DNA from: Lepidodermella squamata
Taxonomy: Eukaryota > Animalia > Gastrotricha
DNA: 64,000 nucleotides
Assembly: GCA_047495785.1 (NCBI GenBank)
Contig: JBLDXI010000032.1
Location: 1,860,001 to 1,924,000 of the forward strand
Direction: 5' to 3'
The notes beneath the pieces were generated by a model. That model had not been told where the DNA came from. It saw nothing but the letters and a program-made list of their open reading frames with translations, and made no database searches. Below, one piece after another: positions 20,770-47,800 of the stretch. The first letter of the stretch is position 1; each line of letters begins with the position of its first letter. A program made the translations under genes and the position numbers.

Positions 20770-23700
20770 ATGAAGAAAGGGCCTCAAAAAGCTGCCCCGG
20801 TGGCCCAGCCTAAACCCGGTGGCCCGGCTAAAAAGACACAACCTGAAAAACCTGGCTCTAAGGCTACAGCTCCTGGGAAAGTAACTCCAGCCCAAGAGCA
20901 ACTGTCGAGCGAGCCAAGTGAAACAGAGGTAATTTCCGAAATATTATAACTCCTATTTCATGATTGACGTTTTGTAGGTAAAAACGCCGGTTTCCCCTAA
21001 ACCTGAGGCTCAGTTATCTTCTCCCGAGACATTTTTGGTATGAAAGCAACATAACTCATTTGGGCTGTGGCATAATCATCAATTTTCTAGAATTACATCA
21101 AATCGCTTGAAAACGATAAGCTGAAAGAGTTGAACTTTCCTCAATCGACGCAAGTCACTGATTGGATGCTGTTTTGGCCAAGGCTTTCTCCTGCCTTATT
21201 CTCATTCATTGAATCTGTTGATATATCTTTGTGTCCAAACGTTACGGACTATGGCGTTTTATTACTAAGCTATTACCTTCCGGCATTAAAAAAAGTAATG
21301 GATTTTAACCTCAAAAAATTCAATTTATAATTTATTATAACTTTGAAGATTAATTTGACTGGCTGCAAGCAGGTCACTGAAAACAGCATGCGTTTTCTTT
21401 TCGAAAAGTGCCAAGTTCTGGAATCTGCTAAGCTTGACTGGACCTCAGTGAGATACATCCCAGCCAATTTACCGAAAGCTAAATTTTCAATCGCAAATTG
21501 CCCGCTCATTGTTGACGAATCGTCGCTACCAAAGCAAATCAAGTATCCAAACGCATTGCCTAAAAGTTTCACATTTGCCAAGATTCTAGTCGTTAAGCCT
21601 CCATCGCTAGCTTCACATTTCGTTGGGCTGAGTATTTTTCCGATGGAAGGCAAACCTGACGCAACTCAAACGATAAATTGTTATCAAAGCGGGATTTTTA
21701 GGGTGATTGAGTGCGTCGATGGGCCTGTTGTCCAGTCGTTGATCAGCGACTTCTCTCTCGTTCTAATCCCGTGTTGTTTTGACGAGGAGGCATATCTCGC
21801 AACGTTGAAATCTCGATGCGCGTGGATATTCAGTCTTGCTAAACATGTTCGAATAGCCATTTATCCGTTTTCCTTGCAGTCAGCGAGCCCGCTCGAAGCT
21901 TTTGGAGCTCTGGAAAAATGGCTTGAAAGTAGTACAAAATTATTGAATGAGAGAATCAACAGCTCCATTATTAACCTAGCTAACAAAGAATCGCCTCAAT
22001 CAAATGATATTTTGAACAAACAAGAGGCGATGCTGGCCTTCAACTTTTCCAGAAACGTATTCATTATGGGCGATGCAGCTTATGTTAGGCAATGGGCGGT
22101 TGACAACAAGCCACATAAAGATATTCCCAAGTCGATTTGGTTGGCCTGCCAATCCTTCGATAAAGCAAAAGCTGTCCTGAAAAAGGCGGCAAAGACGTTC
22201 TTTAGTGTTGATCATTTGAGAAAATTGATTAGCGGAGATTTCTCTGGTTATTGCTGGAATTCCTTAGTTTCGTTCCTGGTAGAAACTGGAAATTGCTGGG
22301 TTGAAACTTCCTATGGTAACGATGGGCTGAATGTCGGACCTAAGCACGCATTTGCTTTAATCGAATCTTTCGTGGCGTTTTTGAACAGCTTAATAACTAT
22401 GGAGAAGCCTCGAACCGCCGCAGGTGAAGATATTACCTGCTTAGACACCGATACTCCGTTGTTGTCTTTTGATGCTGCGTTCAAGTTGTTCATGAATGAA
22501 GAATGCTTTAAAGAGGAGGAATGCCTCAGATTAATGCGATATTTCGAATTCATGGGGCTTGCAATAGTTAGATCCGAATATGTTCTGATACTATCAGATC
22601 TGCGTCCACAGCCACCGATCCCGATAACTCATTTCCATTATGAGAACGAAGACACCATTGAGATCAAAACGAACTATCAGCTAACCTGCCTGCCGAGTAA
22701 CGTTCTCCCTGGATTAGTTGCCCTGATGGTCAAAGTTTTCCCGCCTACGATATTATGGCGTACTGGAGCTTACTTCTGCGAAGCCTCGATTTTAGGCATT
22801 TTATTGACTGCTGACGATGAAGCTCAGGTTATAACACTTAATCTAAGCTATGACAATACCGCTGACTTGGTTCAGTTGCCTTCATACGCCAATAATATCC
22901 AGCAATTCAAGGCTGCCCTTGATTACTCGCTATGTTTGGCAACTACCGCTTGTTGTGTTTACCTTCAGCCGTTTTCGATCGTTGACCTGACTAACGATGC
23001 CAACTTTATTTCTCCTGATTCTATTACCCACCCTGTGAAGTCTATGCCGGAAACTCGGCTCTTCTCCAGGCAGTTTGACCATACTCTTGCGAGATGTACT
23101 CGCTGCTCCATTGATATTTCGGCAATTGCTTCAATAGGTCGCTATCATGTCAGAAACGTTGGCATTAATGACGAGCCAGTTCTTGAACCCGTTAAAGGTT
23201 CAGAGATCGCGACGACGAAATTTAGCCTTGGCAACTACGAGATCGCCGATGGCGAATCTTTGCCGATATTCAACGATTTTGCGCCCAGCTTTTTCGAAAT
23301 TTCGAATACGGATCTTCTGGAGAATTTGATACTTTACCCGGGCAGCTCGTTCACCGGATCGGGATTAGCTATGGCATTTGCCGAGGGTAACAAGCTGATT
23401 GAATGCGTCTACGTATATGGAATCGACGGCGACAAGCCTGCAAAAAAGCCAAGCAAGCCGAGCACGCCATCGAAAATTAGCAGTAAATCTCCGATAGCCA
23501 TTAAATCGAGTTTGCGAGTTGATGTTTGCCTGGGAAAGCAGAAACCTGACCCTGAGCTTTCATTGACAGTCAGTACAGACGGGGCCATTGTATTCGAGAT
23601 CCAAGTTCCATTGAATCATCAGCTAAGTTTGAGGGCTACTTTCCGCAAACTTTCTGTCGAAAAATTGAAATTTGTGTCCTTTAACCGCAACTTGGGTGTA

Positions 23701-26700
23701 TTCAGGCGAGGATTCTTCCCAAGCTCAGGGGGTTCTGCACAGAGAGCCCAAATTGGCATGCGTCTCGAAGCTGTGGACTTAGTTTACCCCCATTTAATCG
23801 CAGTTGCTCGTATCGACGAGATAGCCCTAGATGGAAGATGGCTGATCAAATTCGATGGTTGGGGATCCAGGTTTGATTACTGGGCAGAGCCGACAGCTGA
23901 ACATTTGTTTCCATGCGGTTTTATGGAGTATGCCGGGAAATATCCTGATGTTATGAAAAAGTTGTGTGAAGTGAGAAAGCAGAACATTACAACTCAACTG
24001 CAGCGTCCTAAAAGCACAGATTATTCGCAAAGCCCCTTCCCTTGGCTGCAGTATTTCAGCGTCGTTAAAGAAGAGCGAGATGGAGAGCCAATAATTGCTC
24101 AAGCGGTGCCTTTGCACCTGTTCGGAAAATCGCATTTGTTGGGATTTGACAAGGATCCGAACTGTAATCAATACATGAACGTGGGAGGACATAGTCCGAC
24201 TTTGACCAGCTTGTTGTGCGACCAGGTTGCGAAATCTTTGTCAGCTGATGAAGAAGCTATCAACTATCGCGTGTTCCAGCATCTTGCGCTCCCTGCTGAT
24301 ATCGACTGGTCGCTGCTAGCTTGGCCTTCACGAGCGCAGTTGCTCGACTCGAAGAAAACATACCCACACTTTTTATGCGCCTGGCCGGACTTCGTGCATT
24401 TTGTCAACGAGCCTGGCAAGTTCGAAGATAACACCCCGGAATCGTCGGGCATGACTTTGGCTCTCGCAAATGTTCCTTCAATAAGTGGGCTCGCTAATAT
24501 TCTGAAGAAATGGCTCCTTGAGCAGCCTCGTTATATTCCAAACGATTTCAGCCTTCTCTTCAGTAATTTGGTCAAAGATTGCCCGTATTCTTACACGTTT
24601 TTGAACAAATCCGCCCTAAAAGCAGAGTCCGATGTCAGATATATCGAGGAGTGTATGAGGCAGCGCTTACTACCTTTTCTCCTGGAATATTTGCTGATAG
24701 TCGGGAATCTTGGCATCGAAAAGGTTTCTGAGATACTGCCAAAGCGGGCAGAGGTTGTCGGCGCTTATCAGCGTGTCACACTGGCTGCTCCGGGAACCAA
24801 CAACCAGTCAACATGGGCAAGTGTTACCGCCTCACCAAAATGCCGATTGCTTAACATGGGCGAGGCTGAGAAGCGAGCCTATTTCATGAAAGACTGTCCG
24901 CGACTTCTTTGCGTTCAACATGCTTTCCATTACACCAAATTTATGGAAACTACGACGCTTGATACACAATTGAACTGGAATTCGTCTCTTCCTGCGATCG
25001 GAAATTTTCATGATAATTTTCTAACCGTGTTCGCTCTCAGCCAGAGTGATGCGAGATCTCTCAGCGAGCCATTGAATATTAAGCACCCTTATCTAATGAG
25101 ATTCGCTGGATTTTTGTCGAATTTTATTGAACAAGCTGGTATCCCATCTTTAAGCTATTTGACTGAGCTTTACTTAGCTAGAAATGAGCTGACCAGTTTA
25201 CCTGAGGCCATCTCGAACTTGGCAAACTCTCTCCGAAAGCTTGATTTGTCAAGGAATCTCTTCATTGAAATACCAAATGCTGTATTTGGCTTGAAAGCAT
25301 TGCAAATTTTGAATGTTGACTACAACCCACTGGAGAGAGTAGATGACGGGATTTCTGCTTTGACAAATTTGAAAAAGCTGTCCCTAAAGAGCAATACAGT
25401 TAAAGCTTTCCCAGACGCTTTGTGGCAGTTGACCAATCTGCAGTATCTTGATATATCCGGAATGATACGAATAGCTACAAATAGCATTCACATAGATGAG
25501 GTTGTCACATTCATGCAAAAGGCGAACTTTTCATCGGCTGCCATCGAATATTTTCTCGATGGGGCACATGACGGACAGGGTCGAGGCGATGTTGAGTCAC
25601 TTAATGAGGATTTATTCAACTTCATCCAGCGGCTCGAACTGCCTCCTGGACAGCTTTTCCCTCAGGGGATTCTCCGCCTGAAAAATTTGATTTTCTTATG
25701 CTTGGCAAATCAATCGATTAAAGAGGTCCCTGCTGAAATCCAGTCACTGTCCCAATTGTCCCATTTGGACCTATCAGGCTGCTTGAACCTAGTTAATATA
25801 TCACCATTCATCGCCAAGTGCCCTTTCACCAGATTGAACCTTAACAACTGTCCCCAGCTAAAAACCCCTCCTGAAGAAATTCGTAAGAGTTATTTCGAGC
25901 GACTAATGCAGGGCTCGGTGCAATGCCGTCGAACTAAATTGATGTTCATCGGACTGGGCGGGGCTGGCAAAACCACTCTAGCCCACGCGTTGACCAAAGG
26001 CTCGAAAACTGTATCAAAATTTGAAGTAACTGATGGCATCGATATCACCAAGTGGGAAGTTTCAGATATCGAATTTCGAATGTGGGACTTTGCTGGGCAA
26101 GTAGTTTACTACAACACTCACCAGTTTTTCATTTCAAAAAGGGCTGTTTATTTGTTGGTTTGGAATATCAGGCTTGGCCATGAACATGCGGGTCTTGACT
26201 TCTGGCTTAGTTCTATTGCCTCTCACGCCCCAGGGGCCCCAATTCTTGTCGTGGGCACGCATTGCGATGAAGTTAGTCAAGAGCGCTCCTTCCTACCAGA
26301 GGCTAATTATCGGTCTAGATTCGATTCGATTTCCGGATTCCATTATGTCAGTAGCTTCACAGGTGCTGGCGTTGAAGAATTGAAGGCAGACATCATTAAG
26401 GTGACGCTTGCACAAAAGCACATGGGAGAGGAAATACCGGCTTGCTGGCTAGCTCTCGAGGAAGCCATTTCTGGGCTAGCGGACGAAGAGCTCTTACCGA
26501 TGAAAGCTATGGTTGAGAGTGCCCGCGCAGTAGGCATTTTTTCTATCGACGAGTTGGACCAGGCATTACAGTTTTTGACCGACATGGGATCCATTCAATA
26601 CTTCCGTACCGACTTCTTGCGCGATATTATTATTATAAACCCGCAGTGGGTTGTGGATGTGATGGCTAAAATTGTTTCTGTCAAAAACACGCGTTATATT

Positions 26701-29546
26701 GACCAGGGACGCATTAGGCGCGTTGATATTCCTCATATCTGGGCGGCATATGATCAGAACCTTCATGAGTGGCTTCTGAAGCTAACTGAGGCCTTTGATT
26801 TGACTTTTCCGTTGAAAAACGAGCCTGTCTCGATAGTTCCATGCCTACTACCGGAGAATCCGCCTGAAACCATGGTTTTCCCCAGCCTTGATGAAAACCC
26901 AGGACATCGGCAAACTAAGGTTGTTTTCATGTTCAGATATCTGCCCACTGGGCTTTTCAATAGAGTTCAAGTTCGCCTGTGCCAGTTTTCGGAAGGAGCG
27001 ACAATGTGGAGGCGCGGTAGTTTGCTCAAGAAAAACCAGCATCACGCCCTACTCTCACAGCCCGATTCCACGACTGTTCAAGTCAAAGTTCAAGGCCCCT
27101 GCCCTGAGAATATCGCATTCCTTATTCTTGAAGTCGTTGACACGTTAATAACCGAGTCATTTCAAGGGGTCCAACCCGATTACCTATTCGCATGTCCCGC
27201 GTGTGTTACGATTAGGTCACCAGATCCTAGCATGTTTGAACGATCGCGAATTAGACGCGCTAACGAATTGAAGGTGCCGTTTTTGCAGTGCTTGAACTAT
27301 TTCCATTCAGTTGGAACGCAAGAGCTCCGACAGCTATTCCCAGCTGAATCTTCGGCAGAGTTCGAAACTCAATTCTTCAGGACCATGCAAGACATTACTA
27401 GTCTGCAGCAAAACATTAAGATAGATATTCTAATAATTGGATGCTCGGCTGATGCTAAGCCCGAAGAGCTGGAAAACTGCGTGTCTACACCGGACGTTGG
27501 GAAAGATATCGAGGTGCTTTTTCCTAAATTGAAGGTCGTCACAGTGCCCGATCCGGACTCTTCATCTGATGCTGTTTCGTACGACCAGCTTAATGTCATG
27601 ATTCGCCAAGCTCGTGTTGTCGTCTATTGTCTATCAGCGCCTTTTATGGAGAACGACAGATGCTTAGGCGCCTTTCTTACCGGTCGAGAATCGCTAAAGA
27701 AGCCTAACTTGGTCATTATTTTGCGGGACTTCAATCTTCAGAATTACCCTACTCTCGCATTCCAAATGACCGATGACCTCTACTACAAAGCTATCAATCG
27801 TTCTAGGTACAGTCCAGATGAGTTGAAGAACCGAATTCTAATGCCGTTGGAACTGGTTGAGGCTCAGGAAAGGACCAAGGTTACTGTCTCGAAAAAGAAG
27901 CGACCAGATGTTTTCATTTCATATTGCTGGTCCAACAGTCGCGATGCCGTAAATAAGGGCTCAAAAGCTATTCAGAAGGCTTTGGGAGTAACAGATCCAC
28001 GAGATATTAAGAAGTACCTGGCTGATCATGGCTTCAGTTGTTGGCTTGACATCGAGCAAATCGGACTTGGAGGACTTTTTCGCGATATTGCCGATGGAAT
28101 TCGCTACGCCCAGGTTGTTGTGGTTTGCGTATCGGATGAATATATAAAATCGGAAAATTGCTTACGTGAATTTCACTTCGCCACCACCAGCCTCCGTCGA
28201 CCTATCGTTCTTTGTCCTGTCGGAACGGGAATCGACTGGCAAACGTCCGAAGTTAACCTGATTGTTTGTCAATCAGCTACTACAATAAATTTCCAAGTTG
28301 ATATAAAAGAGAACTGGGAGGCTCTTATTGAATCTGTAAAGAAGCATATCAAAATGAGGGATGACGAAGCAATTGCCCAAAGCGAAGATCCCAACCAGCA
28401 TGCGCTATCTAAACTCGGTCGACGCAAGACGTTATTGAACATAGCCAATGCTGAAGCTAACAGTTCAGCGACTGAGAAATCGTTGATTTTGCATGAGGTT
28501 ATCGAACTTGGTCAAAGGAAAATGCTAAGGCAACTTAGCGGCTACAGCCAAGCGGTCGATACGAGGCCCTATCCTAGGCTCATTTTGCTCGATGCAAAGA
28601 CACTTCCGGATCCTCCGAAAGAGAAGCGGAAAAATAAAGGCAAAAGCGATGATGACGAAGGAGCGAGTGAAAATGCTGATAAGTCCAAAGAAGCAGCGCC
28701 CGAAATTAGGTTAGATCTCCGTTTTAAGATTTTTTCTATACAATTGTTCCGTTTTAAAGGGATAACGATGAGGCGAACGTGCAAGTGGTAGATGAAGCCA
28801 CCGAACCTGCTGAAAAATCTCCTGAATCTGCGGAAGCTAAGGACGATGATAAGAAAGGCGACGAAGATGAGGAGGAACGAGAGGGAGAAATAATTGAAGA
28901 TGATCCATACGAGGGGTTAGACGTAACTGATCCCTTCAATCGACTGAAATGGCAAATTAAGTTTTTGTGTGAACACGAAAGTGGCTGGCATCCAAGTGAA
29001 CACAGCATAGTAGTTACTATACGTCAATTCCAGCAGTTTGGTCTTGGTAGCCCTGGTGAAGCTTTCAGATCCGCAGCTGGCTATTTCGGACCTATGCTCA
29101 CGTTTTTAAAGCAGTCCGGTAACACCACGCTAGAGCTTTTTACTCCGAAGCAACCTGAATTAATGAATACATGTGCTGAAATTGTCGCCCAGGTTGATCA
29201 GCTGATAACTCCTGGCCAAGAAGTGTTTCAGGATAACTACGTCTCCTTCAGGCAAATGGTTATGTCTCTAGATAAACAAAATCAATGCGGCGGTCTTAGG
29301 CGCTGCTTATTGGCGATGGGGAAAGAGCTGTGGCTATGTGATGAGCATCAAGGTTCTTCAAATTATCGCGCCAAAGCTGTGGCCGCAAGTGATAATAGCG
29401 CTGGAGCAACTGCTGAACCTTCAAAAGAAGCGGCTGCTGAGATTGATTCTGCTGATACTTTGGACAATGCAAAATTAGTACCTGTGAACAGACCTCATTT
29501 AGATGCTATCAAATCCTCATATAGTCGAGCTTGTGTTGTGCAATAG
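20770..29546 (+). CDS. ROCO-1: Cys-LRR / degenerate Roc-COR / MBT / LRR / Roc / COR / TIR-like / TIR / CaaX; no kinase domain
   Basis: ATG 20770 (MKKGPQK) with three short 5' exons. MBT GMRLEAVD..FDGW..FDYW at about 23755. LRRs LxxLxLxxN. Roc motifs GLGGAGKT (25951), WDFAGQ, VGTHCD. COR IINPQW..FRYLPTGLFNR. TIR DVFISYCW..NCLREF. Intron at about 28710-28759; ends SRACVVQ*. Confidence 0.88.
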
Positions 29547-29655
29547 TTGTGCTTGCCTATTTTATTTTTTATGATGGATTAAATGACCAATGTTGATGTA
29601 GGCTTGTAATTTGATTTACTTTTTCTCTCAGTGCTCGTGTAGAGTTTTAAAAGAG

Positions 29656-32600
29656 ATGTCCGACGCGCCTAGTCGCAAGGCGAAAAATCAAGGTAGAGTT
29701 CATACATAGCCTTTTCCATTTTCAAAGTTTGAATTTCAGGCGACGGCTCCCCCGAAGTGAGCTTCAACTTGACAAGCCTTTTCTACAAGCTCTCAGACAG
29801 TTTCTCAACTCCGGCAAAATATCTGGTAAGTTTCATTAGTACCTTCCTACTATCTGCTTGACCGAAGAGTTTTCCAGAAACTTTTCGAGCAGTTTGCTGA
29901 CAAAAAGATCGAAGCTATCAACGCGAGGCAACTTGATCCCTTGACAGATGAGCTACTTTGCTTTCCTGCTATCACTACCCCGAAATTCGACTTTGTAACA
30001 ACCCTGGATATTTCTTTCACGTCTTGCGTAAGCGACACTGGAATCCGATGTATTGCTCAGTCCTTGAAAGCGCTGAGTAGCGTGAATGTGGCTGGGTGTC
30101 GCCTTCTGACGGAGAGCTCTTTGCGATGGCTTGATGTTTCAGGCGGCTCAAGGATGATGAAGTTGAATTTCGATTGGACCTCTGTTAGATACGTTCCATC
30201 ATGGACGGTTGATGCTTCACTTCGCAGTTTATCAATCGAAGGCTGTCCCCTAGTGTTGAAACCACAGAAGGTCTGGGACCCGAACTACACCCCAAAATCA
30301 ATCACCTTGGCCAAAATTGTGGTTTTGAAACCTAAAGAAATGGGCCTATCATCGATTTCGGGGCAGATCTTTCCTTGCGATGAACCTTCGTCTATCGCTG
30401 GCATTCCTTCCGTCGCTTACTGCTATAAAAGCGGTCCTTTTCGCGTTTTTGAATGTTGTGATGACGCTTGGGCTCAATTCATTCTTTCCGATAACTGCTT
30501 CGTAATCCTGCCCGTTGTTCTTGAAGAGAGAGCGTCTAGGGCTAATTTGGTAGAGTCGGTGGTTAGCCGGTTGAATTTAGTCGCATGTCTTGTTCGAAAT
30601 GTTAAATTTCTCGTTGTACCTGTTATCAAGGGGATGGCGAATACAAACTTTACACAGCTTCGCGGGGAGCTTACGGAATTGTTTAGTACGGAGACGTTTC
30701 CGACTGAAGCTAACTTCATTTCCGATGTTCGGCAATCAATTTTCAATAACTTGACGAAGACTGATGTGCAATTCACTGATTCCTATGCTGAGGTTCAAAA
30801 ATTTATCAACGCGGAATTGATTTCGCATAAAACATTACCCAACATCGCACAGCCGCTGTTTCAGGCTTTGGAAAATTCGAATTTCTTTTCGCGGCAGGAT
30901 AACGCAATGGGAACTCTGGGGGACTTCCTTGAATCATTGAGTGTTAACGATGTTGTACCAAATTGGTCATCTTTCTTAAGCCTCATGGTCGAGACTGGCA
31001 ACTGCTGGCTAGAAGCTCGAACAGCTATGTGTTCAGATTACCCTTCAGCTATCGGCCCTTCCCATTTGTACTGCCCTATAACGCAGTTTGTGCAATTAAT
31101 CTCAAGTATGGCTCAAACGGCGTCTGAGATAACTGCCAGCCCGGAAAAAAATAGCTGCTTACCCGAGGAAACTCCCTTGCTTACTGCTAGCAGTTTGCTT
31201 GGCGGTTTGGTGGATAGTTATGTGGCAAAACGGTTCATTGGGGTTTTGGAATTAAAGGGAATAGTTTTTGTGTTAAATGACTCTCCTATTTTACCTTTGT
31301 CCTTGAGGCCAGACCCTCCAGTAGATTTGAATCATTTTGTTGAGCGGAAACCAGGTGACACTGTAATTGAGTTATCTTATCCTTTATTGTGTAATTCTAG
31401 TCACACCTTTCCCGCTGTTCTCTCACTGCTGACGAAAATTTTATGCCCGACAACAGTGTGGAAAAGCGGTGCCTTTTTCTGCGAATCTTCTTTCCTCGAC
31501 GTTCTAGTCACCGCGAGTGATCGAAATTTGAATTTGAGGTTTAGCTTCGAAAGTTTTGCCTTGAAAAATGCCGCAGATGATGACCCGTTGAAGTCTTCGC
31601 TGTTAGGCTCTCTATCAATTTTGCACACTGCTTGTTGTGCAGTGCTTGCTCCGTTCGCAGCGGCTAATATTGAAAATGTGGGCACATCACACGGTATAGC
31701 TTGTATCCAGCAAACAGAGCATTGGATTGAATACAGCCGATCACTTCCTTTTTATAATCAAGGCGCTTCAAATAACTTGCGATGCCGTGACTGTTTTCTG
31801 GATTTGAAGAGTCTATGCGCGCTTCAAAAAGTGCAGCTAGTTTCGAGACCATGCAGCGACCTGATTGCAGTCGAAAGTTTGATGACTGATAAAAGCTCCG
31901 AAGATTTGCGATTTGAAGTTGCAATCTCTAACTATTATCTCGCAATTGACGAGACCGCCAAGCCTAACGACTTAGCTAGTGAACCGATTTTCGTGTATTT
32001 TGGCGATGTCAGTAACTTGAAGAAAGTGACGATTAGCCCTTCTTCTACTGAACTTTCCAGCCAATCGGAAACTGAAGCTCTTAACTTGGAATTTATTGCA
32101 GGGACGCTTATCTGCACCACGAAAGGTAAAGATGTTGGTAAAGATAGCCTTAAGCCCGTGAAGTGCGAAACCTGTCTTGTCGAGGCCTGTATCTCTTCCA
32201 ATAGGGAACTGAATGTCATTGTTTCCATAGGGGCTAAGAAGGCGTTTGAAGCTAAATTTAACAGCCCTTCACGATCAATCACATTTACAGTGGATCTCAA
32301 AGCGTCCTCTGAACCGCAATCCGCATCAAAGATGTCCCCTATTTATTTACATTGTCTAAATTCTAACGCAAGAAGTTTGTCGAAAGCTTCTTGTATTGTC
32401 GAGGGTATGGCCTTGGAGGCTGTCGATCGCAAGACACCTCATTTGGTTTGCGCCGCGCATGTCGCTAAGGTCAATACCGATGGCCGTTGGCTTATAAGAT
32501 TCGACGGTTGGTCAAACGACTTCGACTATTGGGCGAAGCCGAATTCGGCAGACCTTTTCCCTTGTGGGTTCATGGAATATCTCGCGCAGAACGAAACGGC

Positions 32601-35600
32601 TTTCGAAGAATGGAATGCTGCCAGAGGTGGGGAAATGAACCGGAATTTACAAGCGCCGCGTGACACGTCATACGGCGTTCCAATTTTTCCATGGGAAAAA
32701 TACTTTGCGGACAATAAAAAATCGAAAATCGGTGTCCCTGTACCATTTCATTTGTTCAATAAGTCACACCTTTGTGGCTACGACAACACGATGTTTTGGC
32801 GGCGCTTTCCCACTCTGACCAGCGACATTAAGACCTTGACGAACTACTGCGCGACCGCTATACCTCGCTTGTACGAAGATTCGATTGATGATTCAGGGCT
32901 TGCGGTTACGCCGGGTATGCGCCTTGAGGCTGTGGATATCAAAAACCCTGAATTGGTCAGTGTTGCCCATGTGAAAGCTGTTACTAGAGATGGCTTATGG
33001 TTGATATCTTTTGATGGCTGGGATTCAAGTTACGATTACTATATTGATCCTTCAGACCCTAAACGAATCGACCTATTTCCATGTGGCTTTATGGAATATG
33101 CGAATTCGAAACCTGGTGTTTTTGACGAGCTACTCGCCGCTTCAGGTCGCGACCTGAAGCGTGAGCTCCAGCCACCATTGGGAACAAACATTGGCAGCGA
33201 GTTTTCATGGGATACGTATCTTGGGCATATTATCAAGGGAAATGACAATGGGCCAGCTCGGCCAGTTCCTTTGAGTAAATTTTATCCATCCAAACTGTTC
33301 GGGTTTATTGTGCCCGAAAATCTTAGTTGTCACGATGCTGTTGAAGAAACGAATAATACTGAAAGTGGAACCAAGCGATTTGCTAGTTATTCATATAGCG
33401 AGATTTTCAAACAACCGCAGTTCATTCCGTTGCCAAAAATGACTAATGAATTGATGCAGTGGCCGTCTCGTATACGATTCACTAAAAAAGAGTTGACCCA
33501 TCCATATTTCATCTGTTGCTCCTGTGATCAACTTCATTTCGTGAACGAGTCTGCATTAAATCGTGGCTGTGTTTCGATCAATGCTGTTCCGCCTTTTGCA
33601 TTGGCTAATATTTTGATTACCCTACTTCAACAGTCCCGAATTGTACCTGATATCTTCGATCATGTTTTCGAGAGTGTTGATACCAAAGAAAAAGGGTCTC
33701 TCGCTGATTTTGAGAAGTCATTGAAACAAGTTGTCTTGCCTTTCTTATTGGACTATCTCACAATTCACTGCGCTTTCGTCGGGGAATCGAAATCTCGTAA
33801 AACTACCGAGAAATTGATCTATTCAATCTACGATCAAAATGAGATCAACAGTGCTAAGTCTGCAGGCGAGCTGTACCTTGCCGGTCTGAAATCAGGATGG
33901 TCAGCTGTTGAATTAGTTCAAGGCCAGGAGCATCTATTGCTTGACATGAGTATTGCCGAGCCTGAGATCTTCGGACGTGATACATTGTGTCCGAGGTTAA
34001 TTTGTGGCCAACATGCCTATCACTACGCCATGTTGAACAAAGATAGCTCAAAACCTCGTTTGACGCTCTCCGCCAAATCGCTCGGGCATTTGCACGATAT
34101 TTTTGTGACAAAATGCTCGTACAGCTCCGAGGATATCCAAAGCCTCGAGAAATCTTTGGACCAACATCACCCAGAAATAGCCCTTTTCTGCGGCACATGG
34201 TCTGAAAATTTGTTCTCAACGGGATTTTCGACTAAAAAAATTACCGAGCTGGTTTTAACTCACAATCAACTCACAGATTTGCCAAGCGGTGTTTCAGCAA
34301 TGGTTGAGACGCTGAAGTCACTCGACCTGTCATACAATCCTCTCGCTCGAATACCCAAAGTTGTTTTTCAAATGAAGTCACTTGAGAGCCTTAGGATAGA
34401 TCACGCTCCGGTAAAAGAAATCGACAATGAAATCGGTAATTTGACATCGTTACGCCGATTATCTCTGCGCTTCAATATGCTATCCGCTTTACCAGAAACT
34501 CTCAAAAGCTTAAATAGCTTGGAAAATCTTGATCTGACCGGAATGCCATTAATATTGAGTAATGACCCTGTTGATAAGGAAAGTATGATCGCCTTCGTGA
34601 AGGAAAATGACTATCCTATCGAAATTGAGCAAAAGTTGTCTAGTTTGTTTGTCAATGGCGTTAAGTCTGTTTCGAAGGATTCAGCGAATAGATTCCTGAT
34701 GAATGAAGTCCCGAGATTGAAAGCGTTCGATCTCCCTCGCTTGCCCTCAATTATTGAGTTGATCATGCCTAACCAAGGTTTCCCTTCGGTATCAGATATC
34801 CTAGGGAGGTGTACGAAGCTTCGAAAGGTTGATTTTTCAGGGTGTTTGAACCTCCAATCAATCGATTCGGCTATCGCATCTTGCCCGTTAGATTCCTTGA
34901 GCTTGGAGAATTGCCCCAACTTGACCACGCCACCTGCAGATATACGAGCAAAAGGCTTTGTAGCAACTCATGCTTATTTCAAAAGACTTGTCTCAGGATC
35001 TGTTGTATGCAAGAGATCCAAGTTGATGCTTGTCGGACTTGGGGGTGCCGGTAAGACAAGCCTACTACAAGCTTTGATGTCATCGGACGATGTAGCCATT
35101 AGTCGGGATGTAGATGTTACAGACGGTATCGACATCCAAACTTGGCGAGTCGCAACTGAGGACGACTCTTTGCTTGATCTGCGTTTGTGGGACTTCGCTG
35201 GACAGGTCGCTTACTACAACACCCATCAATTTTTCATGTCTCGCCGTGCTGTTTACGTTTTGCTATGGAACATTCGTTTAGGCCATGAGCATGCAGGGCT
35301 CGACTTCTGGCTCAGTTCTATCGCTAGCCATGCCCCTGATGCACCCGTCATTGTAGTCGGAACCCATTCGGATCTACTTCAAGGCTACCAACCTGTTTTG
35401 CCAGAGGCGAAGTACCGCCAACGTTTCCCATCCATTCGGGGTTTCTTCTACGTTAGCTCGTTGTCAGGATCGGGAATGGAGCCGCTTAGGAAGGAAATCA
35501 TTCAGGCAGCTCATTCACTAGAGGTAAATTTGAGATTTTTGCCCAGACTTCGCTAATTCTCATTTTTTGTTTATTTAGCATGTTGGTGAAGGTATGCAAC

Positions 35601-38384
35601 TTTTAAGGTAGATTCGTTTGAATTTTTCACTCGTTTTAATGTAGAAATACCTGTTGCTTGGCTGAATTTTGAGAGGCAACTGTTGGCTAGCAAAAATCGT
35701 GACCCAGCAACCACTCCTATTCTTTCGAAAAAAGTTATTCAGAAAATAGCCGACGAAAATGGGATCTACGAAAATGAGGAAATTGATCAAGCCTTGGAAC
35801 GTCTGTCAGATCTTGGCTCATTGCTTTATTTCAGAAACGAAGCGCTGAAAGATCGAGTGATCATCAAGCCGCAATGGATTTTGAACACCTTATCTAAGTT
35901 GGTTTCCGTGAAAAATGCCTGCGTTGTTAATGGCCGCCTTAAACACGCCGATCTCGGTCAAATTTGGAATTTATACCCACCTGAACTTCTCAAATGGCTC
36001 TTGGAATTGACAGAAGCATTTGACCTTACTTTCCCCATTCGAACTGAAGAGCTATCTATCGTACCTTGTCTTTTGCCCGATGATCCACCTAATGCGGTAG
36101 GATTGCCAAAACTTGACGATCATCCGAATCATTACCAAACAACTCTGATGTTGTACTTCAATTATTTACCTGTTGGATTGTTTAACAGGCTTCAAGTAAG
36201 TTACCCTTTCAAACTCCTCATCTTTTTAGCCCTGATAAAAAATAGGTTCGGCTGTGGCATTATTCTGATAATGGATCGATATGGCGGCGAGGAAGTTTAC
36301 TTCACAAAAATCACCACGTGGCACTTTTGACCCAATCGGAAGATAGTTCAATTGAGGTTAAAGTCCAAGGACCTTGCCCGGACAACATTGCCTATCTGAT
36401 TCTCGAAGTTGTTGAGGCATTGATTAAGGAATCTTTTCAAGGCCTGAAACCAGAGTTTTCCATCACGTGCCCGGCTTGCGTTTCTGCCCGAATTTCAGAT
36501 CCTAGCGTGTTCAAACGGTCTCGGGTGAGAAGAGCTCAAGAGCTTCGTATTCCGTACCTTCAGTGTAGCAAGTATTTCCATTCTATTGGAACTCAAGAAA
36601 TTCGGCAGCTCTTCCCCGCCGAAACGCCAGATGACTTTGAATCGCAGTTTTCGCGGGCTATTCAAGCAATATCTAGCCTACAGAAAACGTTGCATATTGA
36701 TGTTCTAATTATCGGTTGCTCAGAGGATTCAAATGCGGCCGAGATCAAAATGCACGTCTCTACTTCAGAGGTCGGAAGAGATATCGTGAAAAATTTCCCA
36801 CAGGCCAAGGTTGTAGTTATTCCCGACCCTGATTCAGCTACGAATCCGATTTTATTCGACCAGTTGGCTTTCATGATGAGATCAGCTCGTTTAATTGTTT
36901 TCTGCTTATCGGAAAAGTTCATGGCCAGTGATCGATGCCAGGCCACGTTTTTCACCGCCCTTTCAACGCTGAAGAAACGTATCCTGACGATTATGATTCG
37001 CGATTTTCAGTGGGCAAAGTACTCGGCCTTGGCTTTTCAGATGAATGATGATTTATTTATTAAGGCGACTGATCGATCGCGGTACAAGCCTTCGGATATT
37101 GCTGATTTGATCAAAAAGCATTTGGCCATTGGGACTGAAAGCTCCACCTTAAAGGAAAAATCTGATGTCTTCATCTCCTATTGCTGGCAGAACAGCCGAG
37201 ATGCGGTTAGCAAAGGTACGAAATCTACAGATAAATCGATAGGATTGACAGACCCAAGAGATATCAAGAAATTTCTTGTTGAAAGCGGCTTGAAATGTTG
37301 GATCGACGTTGAAAAAGTTTCGTTGGGCGGGCTATTCCGCGAGGTTGCTCATGGCATTGAAAACGCTAAATGTGTAGTTGTCTGTGTTTCGGACGAATAC
37401 GCCAAATCTGAAAATTGTCTTCGCGAATTTCATTTCGCTGTCAACGCCGTAAAATGTCCCGTCATCCTATGCGCTGTTGGGACAGGTTCCGCCTGGCTCA
37501 AATCCGAGGTCAGTCTGTTAGCATGTGAGAAAGCGCCTTTCATAAACTTCCAGCTAGCTTTAAAGAGCAATTACGACGAATTGCTGGTGACTATTAAACA
37601 GTTTGTTAAGGAGGATGAGATTCGAAATTTGAATGACGAGGCTAAAAAGTCCGCCTTAATTTTGAACGAAGTAACCGAGTTGGGTCAGCGGAAATTACTA
37701 CGGCATCTTGCTAATTTGAGCTCGCAACTAGCGTATCCTCACCTGGTTGTAGTCGATTTGTTGGAGAGTCCTAAGGATTCGAATTTTTCATCGCCACATG
37801 ACGCAGTTACTAAGGCAAAGTGGGGTGTTCGATTTCTGTGCGAGCATGAAGGCTCGTGGCATCCTACAGATAGCATTATTCCAATTGAAACGACTCGGCC
37901 AATACTAGATTCTCTCAATTATATTAGCGGCATGTTGCAATTTTTATCGAATCTCCCGCGTGTTTTGTCGCTGCAAATTTTCGATCCTCAAAATGAGAAA
38001 ATTATGGCCACTTTGATCGCTGAGATCGATCAATCAAAGTTTGACGTTGAATTTAAGTTGTTTCGTGATTTTGTTGTATCAATGGATCGAAATTTCTCTT
38101 GCGGTTCGTTGAAACGGTGTCATACGTCTCACGGTGTGGATCTTTGGTTGTGTACCCAGCATCAACTTTCAGCCAAGTCTGTGACTGAAACGCGAATTCC
38201 TAGTCTCAAACCGGTTGTTGCGCCGACTGCTGTTGCGAAAAAAGTTGAAACTCCGCCCGCTGCTGCGGCTAAAACTGCGGCTACTACTAATACTGCTGAT
38301 CAACCTGTAAAGCCTGTGGCAAAAGCTCCTTCTGGCAATGAGAAAACTGCTAAATCTAATAGTCGAGCTTGTTCTATGCAGTGA
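29656..38384 (+). CDS. ROCO-2: same architecture as ROCO-1 but with two MBT repeats
   Basis: ATG 29656 spliced in frame into ORF 29941. MBT repeats at about 32404 and 32914. GLGGAGKT at 35035. 13-nt microexon 35579-35591. Intron at about 36196-36245. TIR DVFISYCW; ends SRACSMQ*. Confidence 0.88.
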
Positions 38385-38461
38385 AATTATTTTTTGTTTT
38401 TAATTTTCAAAAATTATATACTTGTCAAATTCTATGACATTTTTCAATTTTTAGATTTTAA

Positions 38462-41400
38462 ATGCCTCCGAAAAAAGCAGCAGTTCCGGAGCCAAAGAAG
38501 AAAGTTCAGGCTAAAACGCTACCTGCTGGGAAAATTCAGCAGTTGGTGAGAAGTCCATCGCCCGTTGAACAGCAGCAACAGCAGCAAATATTTGTCGAAC
38601 AAGTCAGTAACAAAGGCGAGGAAGTTTTCGAAGAAGAAACCGAGGAGTTCCAAGAAGTTTCCCAGGAGCCATATGGCTTGCAACAGGAGTTGAAAGCTAA
38701 TTTGGAAAGAATTCCGTCTTGGGCGCGGAAGAATTCAAACAAAGGCATCGATGTCGTAGAACAGGTTTACATTCAAATAGTTAATGAAAATTGTCGCTTT
38801 ATTTTTGTCTACTTATTATAGAAGTTGGACCAGGCATTTCCCAGTAAGCGCCCTGTGAGGCAGGAGCTGAGTAACAACGCTCGTAAGGCTTTGAAAGGCT
38901 TTTTTCGCGAGATATTTAGTTTTTGTATTAAACAGCCCCAAGACCGATACAGCGAAAAGCTCCAGTTTTGACTACCGTGACAATCGATGTCGTTGATTTA
39001 GCCAAAAAAACGCCAGAAAGTTTCCGCTCGCCATCGGAATTTATAGTGAGTCACTTCAAATTGAGAAATTCGATAACATTAATAATTGATTTTTTTCAGA
39101 AACTGTTCGCAGTCGGGGCTAACGAAGTTCTCAATAGCGTTAAAATGCGCAAAAGCCGTGATGTTACGGATATTCTGTTTTACTGGCCTCGTTTCTCTGC
39201 GAAACAATTCAAAAATATTACGAATCTCGACATATCTTTCAGTTCGTTCGTCACTGATCTTGGTTTAAGGTGGATTTCCTTTTATTTACCCGCTCTTGAA
39301 GAGGTAAATTTCAGCAAGAAACATCTCATTTTAATATTAATATTGTTTTCAATGAAGTTAAATGCTACTGGGTGTCGATATGTTACCGAAAGTGGATTGA
39401 GATTTTTCCAGCGAGGCGAAATCAGCAAAACGCTCAACTTCGATATGACCTCTATTCGCTATCTACCCTCTCGAATTTCCTCCAATAAAGTGTCTGCTAA
39501 AGGGACCCCTATCATGGTGGACGAAGCTGCTGTTCTGAAAACTAAACGTAAAATCAAGCTTAAATGTTTTTCTGATTTTTCATTTCTTTAAAATTTACAG
39601 CGAATATCCCGCCTGAATTACCTGCGAAATTCACTGCTGCAAAAGTTGTGATTTTAAAGTCGAAGGACTTGCGAGATAGATCCATCGGACCGGAAATCGT
39701 GAAACCAGATGATCCCAGCGCTTTGATCGGATCCCCATCTTACATTTGCTCATATCGTAGCGGGCCATTTCGTGTCGTTGAATGCTGCGATTATACCGTT
39801 TCCAAGCTGGTTCTATCTGATAATTGCCTCGTAATTCTGCCATTTTTAACCGGAAGTTCGAGTGACTTTGTAAAATCAACATTAGCTTCAATTGAATCGC
39901 GTTTCAACTACGTGGTCACCGTGGTGAAAAATGCCAGCTTCATCGCAGTTCCAATCAACCTAGACCCGTCCGTAGATACAGATTTTGACCAAGTTCCGGC
40001 TTTGAATTCGGAAGTTGATGCGATGATTAAGGCGGCTGAGAAAGGTTCAGATGGAAAGGGAGAAGAGTTTAATAACTTCCCATCGGATCCTCGCTTAGCC
40101 ACCCTGCGTTTTCTTATGGATCACGATTTGCGAATTGAAGCGTCAAAAAAGGGCGTTCTACCCTGGTTAAGCAACCACATTCCCCACGCTGATATGCCTA
40201 AATCGGTTAATCTTTTGTTCCAAGCTGTTGAAAAATCGGAAATTCTTTCGCAAAAGGATAAGCCATTTTTATCGATCGGAAATTACGTTCAGGCAATGAA
40301 AAAATCTGTGATAACGCCCGAACTATCGCCGAAGTGGCCAGCTTTTTCAACAATTTTAGCCGAGACCGGAAATTGTTGGTTGGAACCTATTTCTTCAAAT
40401 TGTAGCGACGTGGCTAGTTCTATCGGACCGAAACAAATTTTAGCATCTTTTTCGAATTTCGTCAGATTTTTGAATGATTTTCTCGCTGTTTCCGACTCAA
40501 CGGCAGTCGCTGAGGATATTCAATGCCTTGCGCTAGACACGCCGCTTTGTAATGTTGAAAAAGTGAAAACTCTCATCAAACCAGCCGCGGGTAGTCATTT
40601 ATCTGACGAAGATATTTCTCGTTTTATGAACCACCTTGAGTTGAATGGAATCGCAATTTTCCGCCGCAAGTCCGCCCTTGTTCTCGGAAATCTTCGCCCC
40701 GAACCCCCCATTGGTCTCGACCAGTTCACTGAACCAGGTCAGCCGGCTCTGGCTGAAGCGTTAACGACAAATCACTTGAAAGTCTCGAAAAAATCCAAAG
40801 TGGCTGAGCCGAATACTGACCCAGCGCCCAAACATACGACACATTCCCATGTTATAAGGCTAGATTATCCGCTACTATGCAAACCTAGTGCGGTTTTTCC
40901 GCAACTGCTGGCGGTTTTGGTGAAAATTGTCCCGCCGAATTTACTCTGGAAAAACGGAGCATTTTTCTGTGAGACGTCGTTTTTAGACACCCTGGTTAAT
41001 TTCGACGATTCATCTCGCGTTGTCAAAGTCCGCTTTTCAGCTGAAAATTTCGTTTTCGATAGATCGATCGAAAAATCTCGCGGCATGCAACGGCTTGAGA
41101 CGGCAGTTTTGCATTCCTGCTCAGTAATCCACACTTTGTGTTGCCTTGTCTTATCGCCTTATGTTAAGGAGGATCTCACAAAAATCGGCCGATCGAACGG
41201 TATTAAATATTTGCCTTTCGAGAAAATTCGCCATGACGTTCATTTGAAACATTCGAGGGCGATTGAGACTTTCTCACGCCAGTTCGATCAAACCATCGCA
41301 AGGTGTTCAACCTGCCTGTTTGACGTGAAAGCCCTAGCCAATATTCGCAATTTATGCATGAACAGGCCATTTTATAAGGCCGGTGTAATCATCCGTGGCA

Positions 41401-47400: not shown

Positions 47401-47800
47401 CCAACACGGCTCGCAGGGTGGGCTGAACAAATGCCAACTCGCCCTGGGAAAGGAGCTGTGGCTGTGTCAGGATCATCAAAATTCGGTGTTATCCCGCGGA
47501 TCTGCTGAAAAAAATAACGTGGAGGCAAATCGGGGCGATGAAGAGCCGGGGCCGCTGATGTCAACTGGCAATCAAGAGGCTGCTAATGTTAATGCGAATA
47601 GAGCACGTGGACATCGAGTTGCTGCGAGAAATCAAAGCAATGACGTGGCGGCTGTTGGGTCTCCAGCAGCAGCTGTCGCCAGTTCGCCGACTCCGTCATC
47701 TGGCGTTGGGGAAAGGGCTCAGGCTCGAGGAGTTCAAAGTTCATCATCTATTCAAAGTGTTGATACAGCTACAACTAGCCGTGCCTGTTCTCTTCAATGA
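38462..47800 (+). CDS. ROCO-3: same architecture with one MBT repeat
   Basis: ATG 38462 (MPPKK). Cys-LRR LDISFSSFVTDLGL. MBT at about 41982. GLGGAGKT at 44250. 13-nt microexon 44794-44806. TIR EVFISYCW..NCLREF; ends SRACSLQ*. Confidence 0.88.

What the first reader, a model, noticed from the sequence alone, without database searches (positions are those of the whole stretch)
23755..24130. MBT methyl-lysine-reader domain embedded in a membrane-anchored ROCO protein
Seen: GMRLEAVDLVYPHLIAVARI..GRWLIKFDGWGSRFDYW..LFPCGFMEY..LQRP..FPWLQY..PLHLF, conserved in all three paralogues (about 23755, 32404, 32914, 41982). Established: MBT repeats normally occur as tandem arrays in nuclear chromatin repressors (L3MBTL, SCM, SFMBT) and bind mono/di-methyl-lysine through an Asp plus an aromatic cage. 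The equivalent D, F, W and F/Y positions appear intact here. Inference: a non-chromatin reader of methylated proteins, or an integrated decoy domain as in plant NLR-IDs.
Basis: partly seen in the sequence, partly recalled or inferred. Interest (0 to 1): 0.72.

Follow-up and report, generated by a model that had tools for sequence, protein, structure and literature searches.

The report
MBT reader domain in ROCO-TIR proteins
Three neighbouring giant animal genes for lipid-tailed GTP-switch (ROCO) proteins with TIR domains each carry a real MBT domain whose methyl-lysine pocket residues are intact. The combination is old, kept in many invertebrate phyla and already drawn in papers, but its function has never been tested.

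Summary
Window 23755-24130 translates to the quoted peptide. Pfam calls MBT (PF02820) in all three tandem genes: A 2.3e-12, B 5.3e-31 with two units, C 9.2e-14.

The closest solved sequence is repeat 2 of human L3MBTL1, the methyl-lysine-binding repeat. A confident AlphaFold model (pLDDT 92.8) overlays L3MBTL1 residues 343-444 at 1.5 A (Z 15.1). The Asp and three cage aromatics are present in all four units.

The genome is a 121 Mb animal genome. The architecture MBT, LRR, Roc, COR, TIR, CaaX is not new:
- It is annotated in molluscs, annelids, rotifers, a nematode, a hemichordate, amphioxus and Trichoplax.
- It appears in figures of three papers (Trichoplax 2014 and 2016, Aplysia 2022), none of which analyses it.

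New here:
- Across 32 bilaterian units the cage is kept (D 30/32, F 31/32, W 31/32, Y or F 31/32).
- The MBT sits at a fixed distance from Roc (median 696 residues).
- It is an island of conservation in a fast-evolving N-terminal half.
- Sister paralogues carry a decayed MBT that has lost the cage.

Best reading: a working mono/dimethyl-lysine reader that serves as input or targeting module of a farnesyl-tethered ROCO-TIR switch. An integrated decoy is unlikely. No RNA or binding data exist. The scan had noted an 'MBT-like' remnant in the neighbouring window.

The parts
21343..28709 (+). Gene A, long exon as an open frame. A 5' exon or the true ATG was not determined. Order of parts: N-terminal region, MBT, LRR, Roc, COR-A, COR-B, TIR.
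   Evidence: ORF. Pfam hits LRR_8, Roc, COR-A, COR-B, TIR_2 and MBT. Colinear BLAST to the Solemya orthologue P0077 over aa 343-2417. 27 synonymous against 11 non-synonymous allelic differences.
23749..24144 (+). MBT unit of A (aa 803-934). The beta-barrel core is at 23758-23931, followed by a helical linker and the trailing 'arm'. Cage codons: D812 at 23776-23778, F837 at 23851-23853, W840 at 23860-23862, F844 at 23872-23874. Y815 sits at the N358 position.
   Evidence: AF2 pLDDT 92.8. VIA Z 15.1, rmsd 1.5 A against L3MBTL1 residues 343-444.
28710..28759 (+). Putative 50-nt GT..AG intron of gene A.
   Evidence: The frame changes here, and the downstream frame continues the homology to B and C. 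No RNA support.
28760..29546 (+). Last exon of gene A, ending in the CaaX box CVVQ.
   Evidence: The same tail type is present in 25 of 31 MBT-bearing orthologues.
29941..35523 (+). Gene B, long exon: N-terminal region, two MBT units, LRR, Roc.
   Evidence: Donor site.
32398..32775 (+). MBT unit 1 of B (core aa 823-879). Cage D, F, W, F, with Thr at the N358 position.
32908..33300 (+). MBT unit 2 of B (core from aa 993). Cage D, F, W, Y, with Asn kept.
35579..38384 (+). Rest of gene B: a 13-nt micro-exon (35579-35591), an exon at 35645-36195 (COR-A), and an exon at 36246-38384 (COR-B, TIR, tail CSMQ). Putative introns at 35524-35578, 35592-35644 and 36196-36245.
   Evidence: Pfam. Junctions read. 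No RNA support. The exons were not joined.
39648..44735 (+). Gene C, long exon: N-terminal region, MBT, LRR, Roc.
41976..42362 (+). MBT unit of C (core aa 780-837). Cage D, F, W, F, with Asn kept.
44794..47800 (+). Rest of gene C: a 13-nt micro-exon (44794-44806) and an exon at 44859-47800 (COR-A, COR-B, TIR, tail CSLQ). Putative introns at 44736-44793 and 44807-44858.
   Evidence: Pfam. Junctions.

Best explanation
The three genes are lineage-specific duplicates of an ancient animal ROCO protein with the order N-terminal region, MBT, about 350 unassigned residues, LRR, Roc GTPase, COR-A/B, TIR, C-terminal domain, CaaX. The MBT is a structurally complete single unit: a beta-barrel core plus the 'arm' that in L3MBTL1 leads from repeat 2 into repeat 3. 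Its Asp-plus-three-aromatics pocket has been kept by selection. It most likely binds a mono- or dimethylated lysine on another, probably non-histone, protein. In that role it would be an input or targeting module of a farnesyl-tethered switch whose Roc-COR GTPase controls assembly or activity of the SARM1-like TIR output. Shown here: domain identity, fold, cage residues, deep positional conservation, coding constraint, the output domains and the CaaX tail. Inferred: methyl-lysine binding, the ligand, membrane location, and coupling to Roc-COR and TIR.
For: - Domain identity: Pfam MBT is well over cut-off in A, B (two units) and C. The PDB best match is L3MBTL1 repeat 2, with D355, F379, W382 and Y386 aligned to D, F, W and F. 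PMC3229088 states that Y, F, W and D355 form the L3MBTL1 pocket and that SCML2 and SCMH1 have Phe in place of the Tyr, as A, B1 and C do.
- Fold: AF2 gives pLDDT 92.8 and pTM 0.88. The top 50 Foldseek hits are all MBT proteins. VIA gives Z 15.1, rmsd 1.5 A over 101 residues, 36% identity, with model 6-136 matching L3MBTL1 343-444.
- Cage retention: in 32 units from this genome, molluscs, an annelid, rotifers, a nematode, a hemichordate and amphioxus the counts are D 30/32, F 31/32, W 31/32 and Y/F 31/32.
- Fixed position: the MBT-to-Roc distance has median 696 residues, range 579-769.
- Island of conservation: the MBT is 38% identical to Ptychodera while its flanks are undetectable by BLAST.
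- Single origin: the ROCO MBTs fall on one side of a branch against the genome's canonical repeats (91/90 support).
- Contrast with decayed copies: the sister protein P0001 and a neighbouring paralogue keep only a vestige with the cage gone.
- Coding constraint: allelic differences are 27 synonymous to 11 non-synonymous (P 2e-10). Within the MBT unit they are 7 to 2, and neither non-synonymous change is in the cage.
- Output and anchor: Roc, COR-A, COR-B and TIR_2 are present. The TIR's nearest solved relative is SARM1. CaaX is present in A, B, C and in 25 of 31 orthologues, and there is no TM helix.
Against: - No binding, localisation or expression data exist. The only public run holding this DNA is a DNA run.
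- An intact cage in sequence is not sufficient. From my knowledge of the L3MBTL1 structure papers, repeats 1 and 3 keep most cage residues yet do not hold the histone methyl-lysine.
- The tools give no coordinates, so pocket openness could not be measured, and the full-length context could occlude it.
- Copy A, the one at the finding's coordinates, has Tyr at the N358 position and B1 has Thr. That Asn matters for binding in L3MBTL1, as the N358A and N358Q mutant entries indicate.
- The Trichoplax orthologue's MBT lacks the aromatic cage.
- Canonical MBT proteins use two to four interdigitated repeats. A lone unit has no experimentally studied precedent that I know of.
Confidence: 0.55

Rival explanations
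1. The MBT is a methylation-independent docking or structural module. It holds a partner or another part of the same protein through its surface, as the MBT repeats of Sfmbt hold Pho. On this reading the cage residues persist mainly because they stabilise the barrel.
For: The Sfmbt-Pho and MBTD1-YY1 complexes appear among the structural matches. The Trichoplax orthologue keeps an MBT at this place without an aromatic cage. The N358-position residue varies across units: N 22, T 4, K 2, H 2, Y 1, R 1.
Against: The Asp that hydrogen-bonds the methylammonium is not a core residue, yet it is kept in 30 of 32 units. Where constraint has lapsed (P0001 and the neighbouring paralogue), the cage positions are the ones that decay, while the 'LxPxGF' and arm motifs persist.
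Confidence: 0.2
2. The MBT reads chromatin after all. The protein would be tethered by its farnesyl group to the inner nuclear membrane, as lamins are, or would be released by cleavage. The MBT would then bind H4K20me1/2-type histone marks.
For: The closest sequence and structure relatives are histone readers. Lamins are farnesylated CaaX proteins of the inner nuclear membrane (general knowledge). A basic cluster, KEKRKNKGK, lies near the C-terminus of exon 1 of A.
Against: Known ROCO and TIR proteins signal in the cytoplasm or at membranes (general knowledge). No nuclear localisation analysis was possible, and the protein has more than 2,700 residues. Nothing here tests this reading.
Confidence: 0.1
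3. The MBT is an integrated decoy. It would mimic a host MBT protein that pathogen effectors attack, so that tampering triggers the ROCO-TIR switch, as in plant NLR-IDs.
For: The genes carry TIR outputs, lie next to STAND/NACHT-TPR-like genes and are tandemly expanded here. The wider ROCO-TIR family swaps N-terminal modules: SPRY, PLAT, C2 and MBT appear in the Pfam lists.
Against: The MBT is not sporadic. It sits at a fixed position in one orthogroup across seven or more phyla and shows one gene per mollusc species in the hit list. No effector that targets MBT proteins is known to me.
Confidence: 0.07
4. The units are relics in non-functional or unexpressed genes.
For: No RNA run is available. 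Several paralogues nearby have decayed MBTs.
Against: The open frames run 5-7.4 kb. Short GT..AG introns restore the frame exactly. Allelic differences are 27 synonymous to 11 non-synonymous. All catalytic-type domains are over Pfam cut-offs.
Confidence: 0.03

Closest known systems
Orthologous MBT-LRR-Roc-COR-TIR-CaaX proteins: Trichoplax TRIADDRAFT_57945 (P0071), Aplysia LOC101848126 (P0048), and for example Solemya P0077, Ptychodera P0006, Branchiostoma P0012, Adineta P0082, Plectus P0113
   Same: The domain order is the same and the Roc-COR region is 47-57% identical. A aligns colinearly with Solemya over aa 343-2417. The MBT lies about 700 residues before Roc, and the tail is CaaX. The architecture is drawn in PMC4104024 Fig. 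1, mentioned in PMC5094078, and drawn in PMC9334734 Fig. 6.
   Different: Here the gene is triplicated in tandem, with the copies 28-37% identical, and one copy has duplicated the MBT, as amphioxus has. Further paralogues have let the MBT decay. Trichoplax has SH3, a cage-less MBT and two Tudor/Agenet-like barrels instead. No member of the group has been studied functionally in the papers I could search.
L3MBTL1 (human), MBT repeat 2; PDB 2RJD, 2RHI, 1OZ2
   Same: 36% identity and rmsd 1.5 A over 101 residues. The Asp, Phe, Trp and Tyr/Phe pocket positions match. The unit spans the repeat-2 core plus the arm leading to repeat 3.
   Different: L3MBTL1 is a nuclear chromatin compactor with three interdigitated repeats. 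Here one unit (two in B) is embedded in a ROCO-TIR protein with a lipid-anchor signal. N358 is Tyr in A and Thr in B1. A roughly 20-residue helical linker (model helices 66-84) lies between core and arm.
SCML2 / SCMH1 MBT repeat 2
   Same: Phe replaces the pocket Tyr, as in A, B1 and C (PMC3229088).
   Different: These are two-repeat Polycomb proteins with a different protein context.
Kinase-less ROCO proteins (MFHAS1/MASL1 type) and SARM1
   Same: LRR-Roc-COR without a kinase, as in MFHAS1; one amphioxus orthologue is even named MFHAS1 by its source. The TIR's nearest solved relative is SARM1.
   Different: MFHAS1 has no MBT, no TIR and no CaaX. SARM1 has ARM-SAM-TIR and no GTPase. The match to SARM1 is weak (E 0.008).

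Membership tests
MBT repeat (Pfam PF02820) | Profile score over the curated cut-off (22 bits) | tested here: met
   47.4 bits (A), 107.1 bits with two stretches (B) and 51.9 bits (C). The genome scan gives 53.6-66.4 bits per unit.
MBT repeat (Pfam PF02820) | Five-stranded barrel core plus extended arm, superposable on solved MBT repeats | tested here: met
   AF2 pLDDT 92.8. The top 50 Foldseek hits are all MBT proteins. VIA Z 15.1, rmsd 1.5 A over 101 residues against L3MBTL1 343-444. This rests on a predicted model only.
MBT repeat (Pfam PF02820) | Ligand pocket: an Asp plus three aromatics (D355, F379, W382, Y386 of L3MBTL1) | tested here: met
   The residues are D, F, W and F or Y in all four units, and are kept in 30-31 of 32 orthologous units. 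The side-chain geometry could not be inspected.
MBT repeat (Pfam PF02820) | Pocket Asn (N358 of L3MBTL1) | tested here: inconclusive
   Tyr in A, Thr in B1, Asn in B2 and C. Asn is present in 22 of 32 units.
MBT repeat (Pfam PF02820) | Occurs as two to four interdigitated tandem repeats | tested here: not met
   A and C have a single unit. B has two, but the model of the pair was poor (pLDDT 42.9), so their packing is unknown. This concerns the usual array form, not the domain call.
MBT repeat (Pfam PF02820) | Binds mono- or dimethyl-lysine | not testable with these tools
   Needs ITC, peptide arrays or a solved complex.
ROCO proteins (Roc GTPase + COR) | Roc followed by COR-A and COR-B in one chain | tested here: met
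   In A, Roc scores 68.7, COR-A 90.4 and COR-B 90.4 bits. In B and C the COR parts lie in the next ORF pieces.
LRRK-type ROCO | Protein kinase domain after COR | tested here: not met
   No kinase family appears; TIR follows COR instead. Source names such as 'LRRK1' or 'non-specific serine/threonine protein kinase' are automatic labels.
MBT-LRR-Roc-COR-TIR-CaaX orthogroup of invertebrates | Same domain order, MBT about 700 residues before Roc, and a CaaX end | tested here: met
   On the Roc-COR tree A lies outside the separate SPRY-type and PLAT/other clades that lack MBT, among the MBT-bearing lineages. Deep branches are weak and A is on a long branch.
Integrated decoy domain (plant NLR-ID type) | Sporadic, lineage-specific integration of an effector-target domain into an immune receptor | tested here: not met
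   The position is fixed and the cage conserved across seven or more phyla. The ROCO MBTs fall on one side of a branch.
Catalytic (NAD-cleaving) TIR | Catalytic Glu in the conserved helix | tested here: inconclusive
   TIR_2 scores 50 bits. A motif SENCLREF is present, but the weak SARM1 alignment puts a gap at E642.

The most novel reading that the evidence does not exclude
The MBT pocket is a working Kme1/Kme2 sensor that gates a farnesyl-tethered Roc-COR GTPase and its SARM1-like TIR domain. That would be a methyl-lysine-to-TIR signalling axis outside chromatin, conserved across bilaterians and lost in vertebrates and insects. In this lineage it would have diversified into cage-bearing and cage-less paralogues.
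Probability: 0.25. Interest if true: 0.75.

Novelty: new member of a known kind. Interest (0 to 1): 0.4.

Why it matters
MBT domains are studied almost only as nuclear histone readers in Polycomb-type repressors. Here a single MBT unit with an intact pocket has been kept at one fixed place in a lipid-tailed ROCO-TIR protein since before the split of protostomes and deuterostomes. That points to a role for lysine methylation in cytoplasmic or membrane signalling, possibly immune or cell-death signalling, that nobody has tested. The family is present in tractable animals (Aplysia, oysters and mussels, amphioxus, bdelloid rotifers). Ready-made chemical probes for MBT pockets exist (UNC669/UNC1215 class; their complexes are among the PDB hits). 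The question is therefore directly testable. The architecture itself is already in databases and in three papers, so the finding is not a discovery of a new kind.

Tried and rejected
- Word search with the MBT region of the full-length protein (aa 790-940) found nothing among long proteins. This was a limit of exact-word seeding, because the Roc-COR search then found 31 MBT-bearing orthologues.
- RNA evidence: the only public run that holds the stretch is a DNA run of another haplotype. Its contig runs straight through the 28710-28759 intron, so nothing can be said on expression or splicing.
- AF2 of the two-unit stretch of B with a four-row alignment gave pLDDT 42.9. There is no verdict on whether the two units pack like SCML2.
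- Pfam at E up to 1 on the flanks (aa 1-100, 101-560, 561-800, 936-1260) gave nothing credible. An Atlas feature search of aa 936-1260 gave nothing usable.
- Transmembrane anchor: no hydrophobic 19-mer above 1.84 in coding parts. The one strong hit in 'C2' is intron sequence. The anchor claim therefore rests on CaaX only.
- MBT as one clade on the Roc-COR tree: the label needs 12 changes, of which at least 7 are forced by starred branches. Most 'absences' are short or partial gene models (Dreissena, Pinctada, Glandiceps, Rotaria), so I do not read this as repeated gain.
- Pfam MBT found no further ROCO-linked units in the genome beyond the four. The 'MBT-like' stretch noted by the scan in the next window is only a vestige (E 0.07 to my own profile) with no cage.
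- Each ORF piece was handled by reference. The Roc-COR tree uses A only, and P0039 was left out as too short.
- The large representative search and the complex predictor were not used.
Full report
**What is there**

The window belongs to a 121 Mb eukaryotic assembly (G000 contig C32). Its own L3MBTL-, Scm- and third MBT-gene loci (C10, C55, C54) and its best protein matches mark it as an invertebrate animal.

Three co-oriented genes on the + strand fill 21343-47800 as long open frames, broken only by 46-58-nt GT..AG introns and 13-nt micro-exons that restore the frame exactly.

Pfam gives the same order in all three: MBT, LRR, Roc, COR-A, COR-B, TIR_2. Each ends in a CaaX box: CVVQ, CSMQ, CSLQ. 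There is no transmembrane helix, so 'membrane-anchored' means predicted farnesylation only.

**The observation**

- MBT (PF02820, cut-off 22 bits) scores 47.4 bits in A, 107.1 bits in B (two stretches) and 51.9 bits in C.
- A six-frame scan of the genome finds exactly four ROCO-linked units, at window 23758, 32407, 32917 and 41985, besides the canonical MBT genes.
- Against PDB sequences the A unit hits L3MBTL1 at 6e-30. Its repeat 2 matches best: 52 bits, against 31 and 23 for repeats 3 and 1.
- In that alignment D355, F379, W382 and Y386 of L3MBTL1 face D812, F837, W840 and F844. B1, B2 and C have D/F/W/F, D/F/W/Y and D/F/W/F.
- PMC3229088 states that these Y, F, W and D355 residues make the L3MBTL1 pocket, and that SCML2 and SCMH1 carry Phe for the Tyr, as three of the four units here do.
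- One departure: the pocket Asn (N358) is Tyr in A and Thr in B1.

**Fold**

I built a 32-row alignment of ROCO MBT units (A1). With it AlphaFold2 models aa 795-945 of A at mean pLDDT 92.8 and pTM 0.88.

All of the top 50 Foldseek PDB matches are MBT proteins. VIA-align gives L3MBTL1 (2RJD) at Z 15.1, rmsd 1.5 A over 101 residues and 36% identity, with model 6-136 on chain 343-444.

The unit therefore equals the repeat-2 core plus the arm that leads to repeat 3. That is a self-contained core-then-arm unit, which may explain how a lone repeat can be stable.

**Relatives**

A search with the Roc-COR part of A found 163 proteins at E below 1e-10. Among the 120 listed, 31 carry PF02820 in their precomputed Pfam list. 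They come from:

- molluscs (many);
- the annelid Owenia;
- bdelloid rotifers;
- the nematode Plectus;
- the hemichordate Ptychodera;
- three Branchiostoma entries;
- Trichoplax (TRIADDRAFT_57945).

Features of these orthologues:

- **Position.** The MBT lies 579-769 residues (median 696) before Roc in all of them; in A the distance is 724.
- **Local conservation.** The MBT stretch of A is 38% identical to Ptychodera, as conserved as Roc-COR-TIR (38.6%). The sequence on either side is not detectable by BLAST in Ptychodera, Adineta or Plectus.
- **Cage.** Across the 32 units it is kept: D 30, F 31, W 31, Y 22 plus F 9.
- **Origin.** On a tree of MBT units the 32 ROCO units fall on one side of a branch against four canonical repeats of this genome (support 91/90, 89% of bootstrap trees). 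There are only four outgroup rows, from one species, so this is consistent with one ancient capture but does not prove it.
- **Roc-COR tree.** The SPRY-type and PLAT/other ROCO-TIR subfamilies are separate starred clades without MBT. The MBT label needs 12 changes, but most 'absences' are truncated models.
- **Tail.** 25 of the 31 orthologues end in CaaX.

**Contrasts that speak for selection on the pocket**

- The closest relative of A on the tree is P0001, from an ENA contig. It and a paralogue in the next window (L005, C32:1944001-1954000) keep a recognisable remnant at the same place: the 'LxPxGF' turn and the arm motif. They have lost D, F, W and Y.
- The Trichoplax MBT also lacks the aromatics but is followed by two Tudor/Agenet-like barrels and preceded by SH3.
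- Within the species, the other haplotype differs from gene A at 27 synonymous and 11 non-synonymous sites among the 38 listed in the frame. The probability of so many synonymous changes by chance is 2e-10. In the MBT unit the count is 7 to 2, and both replacements lie in the linker.

**Mechanism**

My best reading, at confidence 0.55, is a working mono/dimethyl-lysine reader. It would serve as the input or targeting module of a farnesyl-tethered switch in which Roc-COR controls a SARM1-like TIR (nearest solved relative, E 0.008).

- Shown: the domains, the fold, the cage, the deep positional conservation, the coding constraint and the CaaX tail.
- Inferred: binding, ligand, location and coupling to the output.

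Rivals:

- a methylation-independent docking module (0.2);
- chromatin reading from the nuclear envelope (0.1);
- an integrated decoy (0.07), disfavoured because the domain is fixed and ancient rather than sporadic;
- dead genes (0.03).

An intact cage is necessary but not sufficient. From my knowledge of the L3MBTL1 structure papers, repeats 1 and 3 keep most cage residues without holding the histone lysine.

**What is known already**

Full-text searches found three papers that show the architecture:

- Civiero et al. 2014 (PMC4104024, Fig. 1; they also note a Ras-like domain N-terminal of Roc in TRIADDRAFT_57945);
- van der Burg et al. 2016 (PMC5094078);
- the Aplysia immunome paper (PMC9334734, LOC101848126, Fig. 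6).

None of them analyses the pocket or proposes a ligand. So the proteins here are new members of a known but unstudied kind.

The conservation analysis of the cage, the core-plus-arm definition of the unit, and the cage-bearing versus cage-less paralogue contrast are, as far as I could search, new.

The scan itself had already noted an 'MBT-like' stretch in the neighbouring window (s1-368402), the CaaX tails (s1-394078) and the family's breadth (s1-368321).

**Verdict**

Novelty is modest and interest is 0.4. It would be higher if methyl-lysine-gated TIR signalling were shown.

Noticed in passing
L005:3-7025 (G000:C32:1944001-1954000), aa 455-650 of its 2341-codon frame; also P0001:746-909: A neighbouring ROCO paralogue and the closest database relative of A keep a vestigial MBT at the homologous place. 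The turn and arm motifs are recognisable, but all four cage residues are lost. The local family thus splits into cage-bearing (A, B, C) and cage-less copies.
   Followed up: partly
P0071:940-1240 (Trichoplax TRIADDRAFT_57945): The placozoan orthologue has SH3, an MBT without an aromatic cage, and then two Tudor/Agenet/chromo-barrel-like domains with W/Y-rich motifs (weak Pfam hits to Agenet, MSL3 chromo-like and MORC2 chromo-like).
   Followed up: partly
window 35579-35591 and 44794-44806: Genes B and C have a 13-nt micro-exon encoding H-V/M-G-E, flanked by 52-58-nt introns, just after Roc. Gene A has the same residues (HMGEE) without any intron, so the paralogues differ by intron gain or loss.
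   Followed up: partly
window 29547-29940 and 38385-39647: The intergenic gaps between the giant genes are very short. The open frames of A and B begin without an early ATG, in an RNI-type LRR that aligns to aa 150-222 of the Solemya orthologue. 5' exons or trans-splicing are therefore likely, and the gene starts are unresolved.
   Followed up: no
window 24148-25122 (A aa 936-1260): A stretch of about 325 residues between the MBT and the LRR is conserved among A, B, C and the bivalve orthologue (motifs such as WPSR and CCWPDF.HFVNE). It has no Pfam or Atlas match and is an unassigned domain.
   Followed up: partly
window 25884: The other haplotype (run X1) carries an in-frame 21-nt insertion after 25884, inside the LRR-to-Roc region of gene A. 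SNP density is also much higher in 23838-25479 than downstream.
   Followed up: no
window 17953-19952 and 49668-50618: The ORFs flanking the ROCO cluster give weak hits to NWD1-type winged helix, NPHP3 TPR and NACHT/AAA_16 families. NLR-like STAND genes therefore lie next to the ROCO-TIR genes.
   Followed up: no
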